63,837 nt of DNA. It comes from Antechinus flavipes (Eukaryota). Below, in pieces: positions 6,185 through 54,621 of this stretch. The stretch lies in contig NC_067398.1 of assembly GCF_016432865.1 (NCBI RefSeq), positions 703,266,001-703,329,837 of the forward strand. Reading direction: 5' to 3'. A program made the translations under genes and the position numbers. Under the pieces are notes generated by a model, which saw only the letters and a program-made list of their open reading frames with translations, had not been told where the DNA came from and did no database searches. Within the stretch, counting starts at the first letter, position 1. The number at the start of each line of letters is the position of its first letter.

Positions 6185-6848
6185 AATAACTATCCAGAAT
6201 TGTGAAATGATCCATTCATTCTGGAGAGCAATTCAGAACTATGTCCATATCCTTTGATGTAGCAATGTCTCTACTGGGTCTGTATCCCAAAAAGATCATA
6301 AAAGATGGGAAAGGACCTACATGTGCAAAAATGTTTGTAGCAGCAATTTCTGTAGTGGAAAGGAAATAGAAATTGAGGGGATGCCTACCAATTGGGGAAT
6401 GGCTAAATAAGTGAATGTAATGTAAATAAGTGAAAGTAATGGAATATTATTGTTCTATACAAAATGATGAGTAGACTGATTTCAGAAACGTCTGGAAAGA
6501 CTTTCATGAACTAATGCTGAGTGAAGTAAGCAGAACCAAGAGAACACTGTACACAGTAACAACAAAATTATGTGATGATCAACTGTGATGGACTTGGCTC
6601 TTCTCAACATCATGGTGACTTAAGGTGATTCTAATAGAGTAGATGAAAAATGCCATTCACATCCAGAGAGAAATTGATGCATAGTATTTTCACTTTTTGT
6701 TTGCTTTTTTCTTATGATTTTCCCCTTTTGCCTTGATTTTTTTTGGTATAACATGACAAATATGGAAATTTAAAGAGTTTACATATTTAACCTATATCAG
6801 ATTGCTTGCTATTTGGGGAAAGAATTGTTTGATAATTAAAAAAAAAAC
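6185..6848 (+). mobile_element. Marsupial L1 3' end (ORF2 C-terminus + 3' UTR)
   Basis: ctactgggtctgtatcccaaaaagatcataaaagatgggaaaggacctacatgtgcaaaaatgtttgtagcagc... ending in an A-rich tail at 6838-6847. Confidence 0.9.
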
Positions 6849-8490
6849 AGTCAGCCTCTGCTTGAGGATTTCCAGTTCTGGAAACCCATTTTCTCCCAAG
6901 ACATCCCTTCCATTTTTGGACAAGATTAGTTATTTTTTTCCTGATGTAGATCCCCAAATTTACCTCTGCCACTTTACCAGCTACTCTTGGTTTTTTGTCC
7001 TCTGGAGTTGTGTGGAACAAAGCAAATCTACATTCCCCATGATGGTCTTTCAAATTCTGGGATCATGATAAACTGAGCATGTCTCCCAGGATCTATTTAT
7101 CTCCCAGGCTTTTCATGCTGTTCCACTTTCCTTGTTATCCTCCTACTTCTCTGATTGTTCCTTCTCAGTGTCCCATTGCACAAACTGCAAAATGCATATT
7201 ATCAAAATTTTTGCCATTTAAAGTCTCTGACAATCTAGCTTCAATCTATCCTTCCTGATTAATTTGCTTTTTTAATCTTTTAAAAAGATCCAAATTTTTT
7301 GCTAATATAGACTTTTTTTTTTTAACATTTTAACCTTCATTCTGAAGAAAATTAAAATCATTGACATACAAAAAGTAATAGAAGGTAAGGTCTTCTGTTG
7401 AAACCCATTGGATCCTACTTAGATCTTGTCCTATTTCTCTGAAATGAGACAACCATTTGGGGGTCCCCTCTGTGAATACACTCATTAGAGCCCAGAATGA
7501 AAATGAAGTAGACTCCCAAAATAGAACTTTCTCCAAAGGAACATCATTAACCTTCATACATGTTGCATTCTGGTCAAAGGAGCCCTAGATGTGTTCTTTC
7601 CCTTAATAGAAGGTAATCTTCTTGAAGACAAGGACTTTGTTTGCTTTGTTTTATTTATTTGTATTAATTGATCCCTAAATTGTTAGCACTCCCTCTCAAG
7701 CTATTAATTGGTATATTTACTTTACATGTATTTGTATTTAATTACCAGAGTGCCTATGAGTTCTCCATTATAATATAATCTCCATGAAGGCAGGGACTGT
7801 TCTGTTTTTGGCATTATATCTCTAGCATCCACAATAATTGCCTAGCCCAAAGTAAATACTTAAATGCAATTGAATGAATTAATTAGTGAATTAATGAATG
7901 AATAAAAAATTAAGAATTGACTCAATCAGAAGACCAAGATTCCTAGGCTGTGCAGAAGATGTCTCTGTGGGTGGGCCAATCAAGAATCTAGTTCATTATC
8001 TGATAAAAATGAGGATTTAATGGTGCTATTAAGAAGGAAATAATTGTGCTCCTTGAAAAGGGAACTTAAGGAAAGATAAAAGAGAAAATCATTGACACTT
8101 TGGAGAAAGGCCCTAAAATAATCTTCCTTAGGAGCTCCAGTGTGTTAAACCGTGAAAACATGGAGAGGAGAAAATGAATCAAATAGACTCCAATGTAACC
8201 TTTAATTTGCACCCATGAAATAATTTTGATGGTCACTCATAACTATTTAACGGATGTTTATTCTCGAAATGTCATCCCTGCCTATGAGATTGCTCGGATA
8301 TGCACCAAGCATTGACTCTCTATTAATATGTACATGTGGAAAGACACGCCGTCTGTTTCATGTCCTGACATCTTTTTGATGCATCCAGACTCAGCTGGAA
8401 TTTGATAAGGGATTATACAATTCAGGCAAAGTGTGCCTGGGGTGCCATGATCCCATCCAGAACTCTAAGTCATGTTGTCTTCAAGAAACT

Positions 8491-11289: not shown

Positions 11290-11480
11290 CCAATCATTTT
11301 TCAGTTGTGTTCTATTCTCTGTGACCCTATTTGGGTTTTTCTTGCCAAAGATATTGGAGTAGTTTCCAATTTCAATTTACACCTGAGGAAACTGATGCAA
11401 ACAGGTGAAGTGCTCAGGGTCACAAGCTAAGTATCTGAGGCCAGATTTGACTTCATGTCCTACGCTTTGTGCCACCATAA
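11290..11480 (-). mobile_element. MAR1-type marsupial SINE
   Basis: ttcagttgtgttctattctctgtgaccctatttgggtttttcttgccaaagatattggagtagttt (antisense of the MAR1 3' tail) plus CORE. Confidence 0.8.
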
Positions 11481-11732: not shown

Positions 11733-12000
11733 ATTGTTGTTGTTGTTCAGTCATTTCAGTCATGTACAACTCTTTATGAGCTCATTTGGAGTTTTCTTGG
11801 CAAAGATACTGCAGTAGCTTTCCAGTTCCTTCTCCAGCTCATTGTACAGTTTAGGAAACTGAGGCAAACAGGATGAAAGATATTTGCCACAGGTCACCCA
11901 CCTGAGTGGGTGAGGCCACTAACCTCAAGTATCTGAGGCCAGATTTTAACTTAACAAGGTGAATCTTCCTGACACCAGACCCAACCACCTAGCTGCTCAA
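11733..12000 (-). mobile_element. MAR1-type SINE
   Basis: ttgttgttgttcagtcatttcagtcatgtacaactctttatgagctcatttggagttttcttggcaaagatact... Confidence 0.85.
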
Positions 12001-17385: not shown

Positions 17386-18936
17386 TATTGGGGGGGATTG
17401 CTTTGTTGTCCCTTCCCTCTTCACTTCCATGTCTTGGAATCCCCAGCATCTTTCAGATGTTGCTTCCTACAAAAGACCTTTGAGATCCAGATAAATGTCA
17501 GCTTTTTCCAATTCCCCCACTTAACATTCCCCCTTCCTTAAATTACTTCATATATAATTCGTATTTATTCATTTGTTTGTTTATTTATATAGATTTTCTT
17601 TCTCTCTTTCCATGCTCTCCCAAAGGAAAAAAAATGTCACTAGAACTGACCTGTAGTCCAGAATCTGCTTTTAATGCCCTTTGTGACCTCACAGAGGTTA
17701 ATGTGGAGTGATGGACAAACTGCTAAAGTTGGTACCAGGAAAATCTAAGATCATATCTGTCTTTTATCATGAGCACCTGCAGAAGTTTCAACATAGACTC
17801 ATGGAATAATGAATCTGAAAGTGCAAGAGATCTCAGAGGCCATATTTTTTAAAGCTAGCATATTTTTGCAAAATATTTTACAAATATTAATCCATTTGAA
17901 CCTCATGACAACGCTGGGAGGTAGGTGTTACTATTATCCCCATTATACAGATGACAAAACTGAGGCAGACAGCAGTAATGTGACTGGCCAGAGTCACACA
18001 GGTAATAATGGCTGGAGGTTTTTCAGACTCAAGGCCTAATGCTCTATCCATTGTTCTTAAGTTCCATCTCCCTCATTTCATAAATGACAACCAGATCTAG
18101 GGATGTAAAGTGACCTTTGTCAAGTGCCACAAGTAGTAAGTGTGAGAGCTGATATTGAGAGATAACATAAATAGTAGAAAGAGTCAGGTGATCATGGGTG
18201 CAAATCTTGCCTTTGTCAAGTGTAAACTTTTCTAATCTTTCTGACATGGTTTCTCCATTTATGGTTGAGGAAGTTGAATTAAATCGCTTCCTTCCAGCTT
18301 TGGATCTATGATTCTATAATCTCTCTGGGTCTGTTTCTCTTTCTAGAAAATGAGAAGGATGTACTAGATCTCTGAGGCCTCTTCTGGCTTCCAGGCTATA
18401 TAACATGGTGTCTCTCAGTTCTTTGACTTCCTCCAACTAAATGATCTTGAGGATTCCCTTGGTTTCCAACTTCATGACTACATGACAATCCCTCACATAA
18501 AGGTACCTATACCCAGCAATCCACATGGAATTGGTCCTATCTCCTGCATTCTCTCCACCACAGCACTGCTAAAAAAAAATCTATATTCCCTCACCATATC
18601 CCCTTCTACCTCAACTTGGTTCCGCCATGTTCTGCTCAACAAGGCAGAAAATGGACTAACCTATTTTAGAGAGAGTTTCAACAACAAAGACTCAAGGAAA
18701 AGAGTTTTCTGATTAATGCTCAGTTAGCCAGAAAATTTAATTACTTTAAATTCTCCCTGCCTCTCAGTTAGTTTTCCTCTGCTACAATTATTGGGAAAAA
18801 TCTGATTCTATTTTTTTCTTCTCTTATGCTTCAAGGTCTCCCTGAACCAAAGATCCAAGAGAAGAGAGTGAGATACATTGGGAACAAGGAAACCGGGTTC
18901 AAATCCCAGATCATAACATGACTAGTTTATATAATC

Positions 18937-19583
18937 CTGGAAAATCATTTCTTTTTTTTTTTTGCTTTGATTGCCCAGTATCTACTTTAATATTTCTCCA
19001 AGGAAAATCCACTATATTTTAATACAGGGTATTCTTCTTTTTGGATAATTACAACTATTTTTTTAAATAACTTTTTATTGCTAGAACGCATGCCAGGGTA
19101 ATTTTTTACAGCATTATCCCTTGCATTCACTTCTGTTCCGATTTTTCCCCTCCCTCCCTCCACCCCTTCCCCCAGATGGCAAGCAGTCCTTTACATGTTG
19201 AATGAGTTGCAATATATCCTAGATACAATATATGTGTGCAGAGCCGGACAGTTTTCTTGTTGCACAGGGAGAATTGAATTCAGAAGGTATAAATAACCCG
19301 GGAAGAAAAACAAAAATGCAAGCAGTTTATATTCATTTCCAGTGTTCTTTCTCTGGTTGTAGCTGCTTCTGTCCATCTTTGATCAATTAAGGCTCTCTTT
19401 ATCGAAGAGATCCACTTCCATCAGAATACATCCTCAAACAGTATCGTTGTTGAGGTATATAATGATCTCCTGGTTCTGCTCATTTCACTCAGCATCAGTT
19501 CATGTAAGTCTTGCCAGTCCTCTCTGTATTCATCCTGCTGGTCATTCCTTACAGAACAATAATATCTGGAAAATCATTTCTTT
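18937..19583 (-). mobile_element. Young 5'-truncated L1 (~510 bp) with 94-bp 3' transduction, poly(A) and 15-18 bp TSD
   Basis: TSD ctggaaaatcatttc(ttt) at 18937-18951 and 19566-19580; T12 at 18952-18963; non-L1 segment 18964-19057; L1 AATAAA (minus) at 19074-19079; L1 3' UTR with many intact CpGs. Confidence 0.88.
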
Positions 19584-19988
19584 CTCTCAGTTCCCATTTT
19601 CTTCTCTTTAAAATGACTCAGAAGGCAGAGACCTAGATTCAAATCCTCTCTCTAATGGGGACTACTTTGGGCAAGTAACCCAGAGCCTTGGTGTCCTTCT
19701 CTGAAAAATCAGGAGCTTAAACTTAATGGCTTCTGTCATACCTTCCAGTTCTGGGGCTAGGATCCTGTGAGCCCATTAGCTCTTCCAGAGTCTTAGGAGG
19801 GAAATGCTCAGCAAAACAGAATGATTTTCATTTCTCCAATTCTTTATTATGATTCTTCCATTAGGAAAAACCCACCCAAAGACTAAGAAAAACATGTGAG
19901 AAAATAGTGGAACCTAAAGTCCCTTATAGGCTCTTGGATAAACAGCCCTTAAATGAATTTGTGGGTCCATGACCAATTCAGAGTTTCT

Positions 19989-20120
19989 AGAGCTGGGGGA
20001 GGTCTTACAACAGGGGATGTCAGAGCTGGGAGAGGTCTTAGATAGGGGAAGTCAGGGCTTGGGTAGATTCTAAGAAGAGGGGATATCAGGGCTGGGAATG
20101 ATTTTAGAGATCACCCCAAT
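19989..20120. repeat. Minisatellite, ~4 x 32-34 bp
   Basis: Units begin agagctggg/agggctggg at 19989, 20022, 20054, 20088; the last unit runs into a MIR3-like end. Confidence 0.75.
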
Positions 20121-20975
20121 AAACCCCCTTATTTTATAGAAGTGAGTCCTAAGAGCCATCAAACAAGGAGCAATGACTTGTCCAAAGTCACAAGGGCAAC
20201 AATGTTGAAAACTTTAAAACTATGATTTCAAACCCACTAGGGTTTCCATTGCTCCAAAGTGTTCCTATCCTCTCTCCCAAAGAAGTTCACTCTCTGATAG
20301 AACCAGACTCATTACTATTTCCCAACTCAGCTCTATGTTTCTTTCTGGATCCAATAAAACGTCATCCTTGATGAAATAGCCAAGTTACTTTGGGATAGAA
20401 GGCATCATCCAAACTTGGGTGACAACACAGACAGAGGCAATGGCAAGTTTAAGCATAACAAAGATGCAACCCTCAGTCACAGCATTGAAAAGGAAATTTG
20501 ATTTTACCCAATTCCATTCAATTCAGAAAAAAACTTATTAACCATCTACTCTAAGCAAAGAATTGTGCTTCACTTGAGGGATACAAAAACAAAACAAGCT
20601 GCCGCTCTCCTCAAAAATCTAAGACATTAAAAAAGGTAGGTGAAATGGAGGAGATACAACTCAGATACAGAAGATCACAGAGCTAGGGCAGAGGAACCTC
20701 AGAAATAATTTAATCCAGCACCCTTCACTTTACTGAGGAGAAAACTTTACTGGGAAAGATAAGTGAATTTTCCAGGATCATACAGGTAGAAAAATGTAAA
20801 GGTGAGAAGTGAAGTGATTTGCTAATGATCACTCAGATATATCAGAAGTAAATTGTGCACCCTGGTCTTCTTGATTCTAGATGCTATTATTATCCAATAG
20901 TGCCACAACTCTGAACTCTCCGTCTCTAAGAAGCTTACAACCTCTGGACTCACTTAGGTGTAATATGGAGTCATG

Positions 20976-34963: not shown

Positions 34964-35093
34964 NNNNNNNNNNNNNNNNNNNNNNNNNNNNNNNNNNNNN
35001 NNNNNNNNNNNNNNNNNNNNNNNNNNNNNNNNNNNNNNNNNNNNNNNNNNNNNNNNNNNNNNNNNNNNNNNNNNNNNNNNNNNNNNNNNNNNN
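34964..35093. other. Assembly gap (130 N)
   Basis: Run of N. Confidence 1.
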
Positions 35094-40618: not shown

Positions 40619-40852
40619 ACAAATTTAGAGCTAGATGATAATTGGAGAAATAGATATAGAAGGATTATATATGTTTAACATATATTGGGTTACTTGCCAT
40701 CTAGAGGAGGGGTGGGGAAAGAGAGGGGGAAAAATGGAACACAAGGTTTTGCAAGGGTTTGTATTGAAGATTATGTTTGCATATGTTTTGAAAATCAAAA
40801 GTTTTAATAATAAAAAATTAAAACATAGGAAAAAAACAAATTTAGAGCTAGA
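40619..40852 (+). mobile_element. 200-bp L1 3' end with 17-bp TSD, inserted in a MIR3-like end
   Basis: TSD acaaatttagagctaga at 40619-40635 and 40836-40852; same L1 family as 54119-54840. Confidence 0.88.
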
Positions 40853-44510: not shown

Positions 44511-44644
44511 NNNNNNNNNNNNNNNNNNNNNNNNNNNNNNNNNNNNNNNNNNNNNNNNNNNNNNNNNNNNNNNNNNNNNNNNNNNNNNNNNNNNNNNNNN
44601 NNNNNNNNNNNNNNNNNNNNNNNNNNNNNNNNNNNNNNNNNNNN
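44511..44644. other. Assembly gap (134 N)
   Basis: Run of N. Confidence 1.
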
Positions 44645-53540: not shown

Positions 53541-54165
53541 CATTTATATGTATTTTTTGGTAACTGTTTTTAATAATTTTTTTAAATAACAGTATAGTTA
53601 TAGAATTGATTTCTTTTGTAATCTTCTATATTTTATTTTATACTCTTAAGGGGGAATGAACATTCATTAAATACCCATATTTCAGGCATTGTGCTAAGTA
53701 CTTTATAATTATTATATTGTTTGATACTCGACTACTCTAGGTGTTATTATTTTTCCATTTTACAGATTAGGAAATTGAGGCAGATGGTGGTAAAAATGAT
53801 TTGCCTAGAATCACACAGCTAGTAAATATCTGAAGTTAGAACTCAACTCTTCCTAAACCTAGACCCAGTATTCTATCCACTATTATCATCTAACTGTCAT
53901 TTAAAAAAAATTATCTGGAAAAGAGATTTCTAGACTTTATCAGATGGCTAATGGGCAGAAATTGGGAGAAGAGGAAGGCTATAACACAAAAAATATGAAG
54001 AACTCAAACTCTACACTGTGGTCTCTCTAACTCCACAGAAATTGACAAGAAGTACAGGTGCCCCAAGGAACAATAATAAATATCTAGCTATCCTCTGGAA
54101 CTATTCAATGCTACTTTTTTTTCTTTGCTATTTTTAAGTTAATTTTTTATTAGAGCTTTTTATTT

Positions 54166-54307
54166 TTTTTCCTGAGGCACTTGGGGTTAAGTGACTTGCC
54201 CAGGGTCACACAGCTTGGAAGTGTTAAATGTCTGAGATCAGATTTGAACTCAGGTCCTCCTGACTTCAGGGCTGGTGCTCTATCCATTGAACCACCTAGC
54301 TGCCCCA
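54166..54307 (-). mobile_element. WSINE1-type SINE nested in L1
   Basis: Antisense ...ccacctagctgcccc; TSD agctttttattt / agccttttattt (54154-54165, 54309-54320). Confidence 0.9.
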
Positions 54308-54475
54308 CAGCCTTTTATTTTCAAAACATATGCATGGTTAATTTTTCAATATTGATCCTTGCAAAACCTTGTGTTGTAAATTTTTCTCTCCCTGCCCTCC
54401 ATCCTCTTCCCTGATGGCAAGTAATCCAATATATGTTAAACATGGGGGTAAAAAAATATATTAAATCCAATATAT

Positions 54476-54621
54476 GGGGCAGCTAGTTGATGTAGTGGAT
54501 AGTGCACCAGCTCTGAAGGCAGGATGACCTGAGTTCAAATATGACCTCAGACACTTAACACTTCCTATTTGTGTGATCCTAGGCAAGTCACTTAATCCCA
54601 ATTGCTTCAGCAACAACAACA
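54476..54621 (+). mobile_element. WSINE1-type SINE nested in L1
   Basis: ggggcagctag...(caa)n tail; TSD aaatccaatatatg at 54463-54476 and 54622-54635. Confidence 0.9.

What the first reader, a model, noticed from the sequence alone, without database searches (positions are those of the whole stretch)
18937..19583. L1 3' transduction: 94 bp of foreign flank carried by a young truncated L1
Seen, reading the minus strand: TSD (19566-19583), ~510 bp of L1 3' end with many unmutated CpGs, the L1's own AATAAA (19074-19079) and A7, then 94 bp of non-L1 sequence (18964-19057). That segment has an ATTAAA (18986-18991) exactly 22 nt before an A12 tail (18952-18963), followed by the matching TSD ctggaaaatcatttc. 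The sense-strand TSD starts AAAGAAA, compatible with L1 endonuclease nicking. Established: this is the signature of read-through of a source L1's weak poly(A) signal followed by TPRT. Inference: the 94 bp tags the specific source L1 locus, so a recently active master element in this lineage could be mapped.
Basis: partly seen in the sequence, partly recalled or inferred. Interest (0 to 1): 0.72.

Follow-up and report, generated by a model that had tools for sequence, protein, structure and literature searches.

The report
Truncated L1 carrying 94 bp foreign tag
A 629-bp retrotransposon insertion (the tail end of an L1 plus 94 bp of single-copy DNA copied from elsewhere in the genome) is real and is absent from the same site in a related species, but this is an ordinary, well-known by-product of L1 copying, and the L1 that made it does not lie beside the 94-bp original in the two relatives where that place could be seen.

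Summary
On the minus strand there is a TSD, 508 bp of L1 3' end with its own AATAAA and A7, 94 bp of non-L1 DNA, ATTAAA 22 nt before an A12 tail, then the same 15-bp TSD.

Contigs of public runs add four points:
- A more distant relative (organism A, flanks about 3.9% diverged) has the exact empty site, with one TSD copy.
- Three close species (E, F, G, under 1% diverged) carry the insertion.
- The L1 part is piled with tens of thousands of contigs, while only one or two single-copy contigs lie on the 94 bp. It is therefore not L1 consensus.
- A parent copy of the 94 bp sits inside single-copy contigs of 4.6 kb (A) and 2.1 kb (G). These match only 18968-19059, with neither the A12 tail nor an L1 beside it.

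The best reading is an L1 3' transduction that is "parentless" in the relatives seen (about 0.72). The main rival is a template-jump chimera of a cellular poly(A) RNA end with L1 RNA (about 0.18).

The insertion predates the split of three species, so it does not mark a currently active master element. First readers of this scan flagged many similar cases elsewhere in this genome. Known kind, low interest.

The parts
19566..19583 (-). 5' target-site duplication (15 bp certain, 19566-19580; three more As, 19581-19583, are ambiguous with the tail)
   Evidence: The contig of organism A joins 18936 directly to 19566, so the empty site holds one copy (record 1).
19058..19565 (-). 5'-truncated L1 3' end: ORF2 C-terminal 47 codons (19564-19424), stop 19423-19421, 3' UTR 19420-19065, A7 19064-19058
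   Evidence: Translation. The first 158 nt are 75% identical to an old L1 at 6444-6601, whose upstream frame matches human LINE-1 ORF2p residues 1166-1204. About 87,000-130,000 contigs per run lie here. The loose-end consensus behind 19565 continues as ..WYMNVME, the L1 ORF2 upstream of the truncation point (table 7).
19074..19079 (-). The L1's own AATAAA polyadenylation signal, bypassed or followed by only A7
   Evidence: Two older L1 copies in the window end at the homologous point.
18964..19057 (-). 94 bp of non-L1, single-copy DNA copied from a parent locus elsewhere
   Evidence: No other copy in the window. In one search only one or two single-copy contigs lie on 18995, 19017, 19018 and 19029. 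Parent contigs: X1 record 2 (4630 bp) and X18 record 25 (2147 bp), both matching 18968-19059 only.
18986..18991 (-). ATTAAA polyadenylation signal used for the composite RNA
   Evidence: 22 nt before A12. It is 18 nt before the CA at 18969-18968, where the match to the parent stops. Chance is 3.5-3.9%.
18952..18963 (-). Untemplated A12 poly(A) tail
   Evidence: It is not present in the parent contigs of organisms A and G, whose match ends at 18968.
18937..18951 (-). 3' target-site duplication

Best explanation
This is a partnered L1 3' transduction whose source element is missing from the parent locus in the relatives that could be examined, that is, a 'parentless' transduction.

Proposed sequence of events:
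1. An L1 once sat directly upstream of the sequence TAGTTGTAATT... at another locus.
2. Its transcript ran past its own AATAAA and its short genomic A-tract (now A7).
3. The transcript was cleaved and polyadenylated about 18-22 nt after an ATTAAA 70 nt into the flank.
4. The L1 machinery nicked the target at an A-rich site and primed on the new poly(A) tail.
5. It copied the 94-nt flank, the A7 and 508 nt of L1, then stopped early. A 15-18-bp TSD was left.

Shown here: single event, TSD, empty site, untemplated tail, PAS, and the foreign single-copy origin of the 94 bp. Inferred: that an L1 stood next to the parent copy when the RNA was made. That L1 was probably a segregating insertion that was never fixed.

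The insertion arose after the split from organism A and before the split of organisms E, F and G.
For: - Anatomy.
- TSD is beyond chance and the PAS placement is rare by chance.
- Empty site: a 1136-bp contig of organism A runs 18300-18936 then 19566-20032 with no letters between (record 1).
- Insertion present in E, F and G: contigs 18300-18996 and 19541/19542/19580 onward.
- Foreign origin: the 94 bp carries only single-copy contigs, while the L1 part carries tens of thousands. Parent contigs in A and G match 18968-19059, showing that A12 and the rest of A7 are not templated there.
- The parent match includes two As before TAGTTG, as expected if an L1 once integrated at an A-starting target.
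- Literature on typical transductions: 72% of partnered transductions have two poly(A) tails, 71% are under 100 bp, and 79% end 10-30 nt after a PAS (PMC13009371).
- Literature on missing sources: 17 of 18 dog transductions map to a place with no adjacent L1 (PMC7980453).
- L1 3' transduction is documented in Tasmanian devil genomes, a dasyurid; this window's own species was not identified here (10.1101/2022.05.27.493404).
Against: - No L1 3' end lies next to the parent copy in organism A or in organism G. G itself carries the insertion, and its parent contig has full single-copy depth and runs on for 2 kb of unlike sequence (record 25). The defining adjacency was therefore not observed anywhere.
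- A7 is short for the tail of a recently inserted, active source element.
- The internal junction (94 bp / A7 / L1) is not bridged by any listed contig and rests on the window's own assembly.
Confidence: 0.72

Rival explanations
1. Template-jump (or RNA-ligation) chimera. The L1 reverse transcriptase primed on the poly(A) tail of a short 3' fragment of a cellular polyadenylated RNA. It copied the 94 nt to that fragment's 5' end, then jumped onto the poly(A) tail of L1 RNA and copied A7 plus 508 nt of L1. No L1 ever stood beside the parent locus.
For: - The parent copy has no adjacent L1 in organisms A and G (records 2 and 25).
- The match to the parent ends at a CA 18 nt after ATTAAA, a canonical cleavage site.
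- The parent shares two As with the A7 junction, which could serve as microhomology for a jump.
- The A tract at the junction is short.
- Template switching and RNA ligation are accepted routes to L1 chimeras.
Against: - All catalogued L1 chimeras have the non-L1 part on the 5' side of the L1. None has it on the 3' side (10.1101/2025.02.02.635956).
- This route needs TPRT to start in trans on a cellular RNA, which is much rarer than cis action.
- Parentless transductions are common, so the missing L1 counts for little.
- No evidence here that the parent locus is transcribed.
Confidence: 0.18
2. Two independent insertions at one spot: a small poly(A) retrocopy of the 94-nt RNA end, and separately an L1 fragment landing exactly at its 5' edge.
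For: Both parts are missing from organism A. That alone does not prove a single event.
Against: - Only one TSD pair exists, and it brackets the whole 629 bp.
- The sequence after A7 (TAGTTGTAATT) does not repeat the sequence before the L1. The 94-bp part has no TSD of its own.
Confidence: 0.03
3. The 94 bp is a subfamily-specific extension of the L1 3' UTR after an internal A-rich tract.
For: L1 3' ends vary. An older copy in the window (40674-40835) has about 25 extra bases after the canonical end.
Against: - At 18995, 19017, 19018 and 19029 only one or two single-copy contigs are laid, against tens of thousands on the L1 part.
- A parent copy exists inside unique contigs without L1.
- Two older L1 copies in the window end at the AATAAA region.
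Confidence: 0.02

Closest known systems
Partnered L1 3' transduction (Moran 1999; Goodier 2000; Pickeral 2000; as summarised in PMC13009371 and PMC7980453)
   Same: L1 3' end with its own signal and a short A tract, unique downstream DNA, a second PAS 10-30 nt before a second untemplated poly(A) tail, one TSD around everything, and a length under 100 bp as in most cases.
   Different: The source L1 was not found beside the parent copy in the two relatives where that place was seen. The endonuclease site matches the consensus only in its A-rich half.
'Parentless' transductions in dog and 'proxy elements' in human (PMC7980453; PMC13009371)
   Same: A truncated L1 carrying a transduced tag whose original locus has no L1 in the genome examined. 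This is taken to mean an unfixed or lost source element.
   Different: Those cases are polymorphic or somatic. This one is fixed across three species, so the source was active before their split.
U6/L1, Alu/L1 and mRNA/L1 chimeric insertions (Buzdin and others; Law and Burns 2025, 10.1101/2025.02.02.635956)
   Same: Two RNA-derived parts in the same orientation inside one TSD pair, with a poly(A) tail.
   Different: In every catalogued class the non-L1 part lies 5' of the L1. Here it lies 3' and carries the terminal poly(A) tail.
Somatic L1 3' transductions in Tasmanian devil tumours (10.1101/2022.05.27.493404)
   Same: Shows that L1 read-through transduction operates in a dasyurid genome and can tag source elements.
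   Different: Those are somatic events traced to existing source loci. This is an old germline event with no source seen.

Membership tests
LINE-1 (L1) 3' end | Sequence continuous with the ORF2 C-terminus and 3' UTR of L1, high copy number, ends at AATAAA plus an A tract | tested here: met
   - The 47-codon frame ends in a stop.
- 75% identity to an old copy, whose upstream frame matches only human LINE-1 ORF2p chains, residues 1166-1204, E = 0.008.
- About 87,000-130,000 contigs per run laid on 19058-19565, with loose ends at 19565 continuing the ORF2 frame.
- Pfam and PDB searches with the 47 aa alone gave nothing.
L1 3' transduction | One TPRT event: a TSD brackets L1 plus extra DNA, and the orthologous site is empty | tested here: met
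   15-18-bp TSD. A contig of organism A joins 18936 to 19566 (record 1).
L1 3' transduction | The extra DNA is unique genomic sequence, not L1, with an original copy elsewhere | tested here: met
   Only single-copy contigs lie on it. Parent contigs are X1 record 2 and X18 record 25. There is no copy in the window.
L1 3' transduction | The extra DNA ends in an untemplated poly(A) tail 10-30 nt after a poly(A) signal | tested here: met
   ATTAAA lies 22 nt before A12. The parent match stops at 18968, so A12 is not templated. Chance is 3.5-3.9%.
L1 3' transduction | The original copy lies immediately 3' of a source L1 | tested here: inconclusive
   No L1 is adjacent in organisms A and G. Absence is common for true transductions (17 of 18 in dog).
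L1 3' transduction | Target resembles the L1 endonuclease site TT/AAAA | tested here: inconclusive
   On the sense strand the possible sites are ag/aaag, ga/aaga, aa/agaa and aa/gaaa. The A-rich half fits 3 of 4, and the TT half fits 0 of 2.
L1 chimeric insertion by template switching or ligation | The non-L1 part is a copy of an expressed cellular RNA | not testable with these tools
   The parent contigs were reported only as coordinates. No genome-wide or RNA search was left (caps).
L1 chimeric insertion by template switching or ligation | The non-L1 part lies 5' of a 5'-truncated L1 that carries the terminal poly(A) tail | tested here: not met
   Here the non-L1 part lies 3' of the L1 and carries the terminal tail. 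The catalogue is described.

The most novel reading that the evidence does not exclude
The insertion is a reverse-order L1 chimera. ORF2p began on the poly(A) tail of a 94-nt 3' fragment of a cellular RNA and then jumped end-to-end onto the poly(A) tail of L1 RNA. That would be a class with the non-L1 part on the 3' side, which current catalogues of L1 chimeras do not contain and which would routinely be misfiled as a short 'parentless' transduction.
Probability: 0.15. Interest if true: 0.5.

Novelty: already known. Interest (0 to 1): 0.15.

Why it matters
As a single case it matters little. Short 3' transductions are a routine product of L1 activity and have been described in many mammals, including devil genomes.

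Its modest uses:
- It is a clean, homoplasy-free presence/absence marker that groups organisms E, F and G apart from organism A.
- It dates L1 activity to the interval between those splits, in a marsupial group where the persistence of functional L1 has been debated (PMC5010896).
- Together with the many similar notes of this scan in the same genome, it could feed a genome-wide count of tags that have, or lack, an L1 at their parent locus. That count would show how much of past L1 activity came from elements that were never fixed.

Tried and rejected
- Pfam scan and PDB sequence search of the 47-aa ORF2 remnant: no hits, because it is too short. L1 identity was shown indirectly through the old copy at 6211-6601. 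Pfam on that copy's pieces gave only sub-threshold noise.
- BLASTN of the 94 bp against the window: no second copy.
- Exact-pattern scan of metagenome contigs for 32 nt of the tag: 0 hits, as expected for host DNA.
- Earlier findings by place and by sequence: blank.
- Szak 2003 and Pickeral 2000 are not held in the library. Three literature calls failed on term syntax.
- The short-sided joints (18968-18972 to L1 positions) were considered as possible sibling or deletion forms. They were set aside as probable chance fits of A-rich tails, with only 21-26 letters of low complexity on one side.
- Depth figures from contigs were not used as copy numbers, as the tool warns. Only the positions where contigs lie were used.
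- The N runs at 34964-35093 and 44511-44644 were left untouched.

Full report
**The observation**

- AAAGAAATGATTTTCCAG (19583-19566).
- 508 bp that begin in frame with YYCSVRNDQQDEYREDWQDLHELMLSEMSRTRRSLYTSTTILFEDVF-stop and run through a 356-nt untranslated region.
- AATAAA (19079-19074), AAGTTATTT and A7 (19064-19058).
- 94 bp (19057-18964).
- ATTAAA (18991-18986), then 22 nt, then A12 (18963-18952).
- GAAATGATTTTCCAG (18951-18937).

The direct repeat is 15 bp exact, or 18 bp with the three ambiguous As. In the whole 63.8-kb window only one other place has a 15-mer repeated directly at 400-1000 bp distance. A poly(A) hexamer 10-30 nt upstream of an arbitrary base occurs at 3.5-3.9% of positions. 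The CpG claim is modest: 6 CpG in 508 bp, o/e 0.31 against 0.115 for the window.

**Is the 508-bp part L1?**

Pfam and a PDB sequence search with the 47-residue remnant gave nothing. Other evidence supports L1 identity:
- Its first 158 nt align at 75% to an older element at 6444-6601.
- The frame just upstream of that element (6211-6366) hits only human LINE-1 ORF2p chains, residues 1166-1204 of 1275, E = 0.008.
- Two further old copies in the window (54476-54313 minus strand, 40674-40835 plus strand) end at the homologous AATAAA region.
- When contigs of four public runs were laid on 18300-20200, 87,000-130,000 contigs per run fell almost entirely on 19058-19565.
- The consensus of the loose ends behind 19565 reads, in L1 sense, WYMNVME. 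This is the ORF2 sequence that precedes YYCSVRND.

The element is therefore a 5'-truncated copy of a very abundant L1 family, cut at 19565.

**Is the 94 bp foreign?**

It has no second copy in the window. In one search the positions inside it that appear in the difference tables (18995, 19017, 19018, 19029) carry only one contig per run, two in X18. Each is at the depth of the unique flanks. The high-copy pile stops at the A7.

Two contigs are the original copy:
- In organism A, a 4630-bp contig matches only 18968-19059, at its own positions 2491-2580.
- In organism G, a 2147-bp contig matches 18968-19059 at its positions 1-90 and then runs on for 2 kb unlike the window.

Both differ from the retrocopy by a 2-nt indel at 18995 and a substitution at 19018. 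Organism A has three more substitutions. The matches stop at the CA 18 nt after ATTAAA on one side and two As into the A7 on the other. The A12 tail and the rest of the A7 are therefore not templated at the parent locus.

**Empty site and age**

A 1136-bp contig of organism A covers 18300-18936 and continues without a single extra letter at 19566-20032. This is the exact empty site with one TSD copy.

Organisms E (probably the source species, 0 differences), F and G have contigs running from the flank through the TSD and A12 into the 94 bp, and from the L1 5' end into the other flank. Flank divergence from the window is about 0.75-0.78% for F and G and 3.9% for A. The insertion therefore arose after the split from A and before the E/F/G radiation. 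It is 'young' only in that sense.

**Mechanism**

The structure is that of a partnered 3' transduction: L1 end, short A tract, unique DNA, a PAS, a second untemplated tail and one TSD. Recent long-read work shows how typical this is (PMC13009371):
- 72% of partnered transductions have two poly(A) tails.
- 71% are shorter than 100 bp.
- 79% end 10-30 nt after a PAS.

The one defining feature that I could not confirm is the adjacency of a source L1 to the parent copy. In A and G there is none. In G the parent contig has full single-copy depth, although G carries the insertion.

It counts little against transduction itself:
- In dog, 17 of 18 transduced tags map to places without an adjacent L1 (PMC7980453).
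- Human references contain 'proxy' truncated elements whose source is absent.
- Active L1s are mostly segregating insertions that are lost.

The insertion contig ends at 18996 in all three species. That is exactly where the retrocopy (tatttcTCca on the plus strand) and the parent (tatttc--ca) part. This suggests a parent-like copy exists there too, in pieces too short to be laid. Whether an L1 stands beside it in the reference species remains open.

**Rivals**

- *Template-jump or ligation chimera of a cellular poly(A) RNA fragment with L1 RNA.* This explains the missing L1, the canonical CA cleavage site, the two shared As and the short A7. It requires trans priming and an order of parts (non-L1 on the 3' side) that no catalogue of L1 chimeras contains. 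I give it about 0.18.
- *Two independent insertions.* Excluded by the single TSD pair.
- *Subfamily-specific UTR extension.* Excluded by the contig evidence.

**Comparison with the known, and verdict**

This is a member, or at the least a look-alike, of a long-known class. L1 3' transduction has been shown to operate in Tasmanian devil genomes, with 35 source elements traced in DFT2. First readers of this scan flagged some 25 notes of the same kind elsewhere in this genome, which I did not test.

Its value is as a clean phylogenetic marker and a dated trace of L1 activity. That matters somewhat in a group where functional L1 copies were reported to be scarce (PMC5010896).

Novelty: already known. 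Interest: low.

**Limits**

- Read laying and the look-up of sequencing runs allow one call each, so the parent contigs are known only by coordinates and their flanks could not be read.
- No listed contig bridges the internal 94 bp/A7/L1 junction.
- Short-sided joints at 18968-18972 remain uninterpreted (note 2).
- The N runs were left alone.

Noticed in passing
window 40619-40852 (+): Another 5'-truncated L1 3' end (about 40674-40835) is bracketed by a perfect 17-bp TSD, ACAAATTTAGAGCTAGA (40619-40635 and 40836-40852). After the canonical end it carries about 25 extra bases (aataataaaaaattaaaacatagg) and A7. This is either a degenerate tail or a micro-transduction. It is only about 74% like the L1 of the finding, yet its TSD is intact.
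   Followed up: partly
window 54160-54476 (-): An old L1 3' end (54476-54313) stops right after its AATAAA-like signal. It is directly abutted by a tRNA-like SINE (ggggcagctaggtggttcaatggatagagc...), which ends in A8 and a second aataaaa.
   Followed up: no
window 6211-6850 (+): An old 5'-truncated L1 whose broken ORF2 frame (6211-6366) matches human LINE-1 ORF2p residues 1166-1204. It was used here as the bridge to show that the finding's element is L1.
   Followed up: yes
window 19964-20091: A second repeat 400 bp from the insertion, made of about 40-bp units of the type AGAGCTGGGGGAGGTCTTA..ACAGGGGATGTC. It attracts a heavy pile of contigs in all four runs and shows 'goes back' joints in X17.
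   Followed up: no
window 18968-18972 joined to 19058, 19061 and 19470 (table 5): Single contigs at single-copy depth in E, F and G, but not A, join the T12+GCTTTG stretch (21-26 letters) to L1 positions. These are probably chance fits of A-rich tails of other L1 copies, but the same joint appears in three species.
   Followed up: partly
window 11429-11448 and 11927-11946: The only other direct repeat of 15 bp or more at 400-1000 bp spacing in the window (20 bp, AAGTATCTGAGGCCAGATTT). It may be two copies of a repeat family or another TSD pair.
   Followed up: no
window 18495 (organism A contig, table 4): Organism A has 26 extra bases (CATGAAGTCTGTCAAGGCTAAAATTC) behind 18495 relative to the window. 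This is an indel difference in the unique flank.
   Followed up: no
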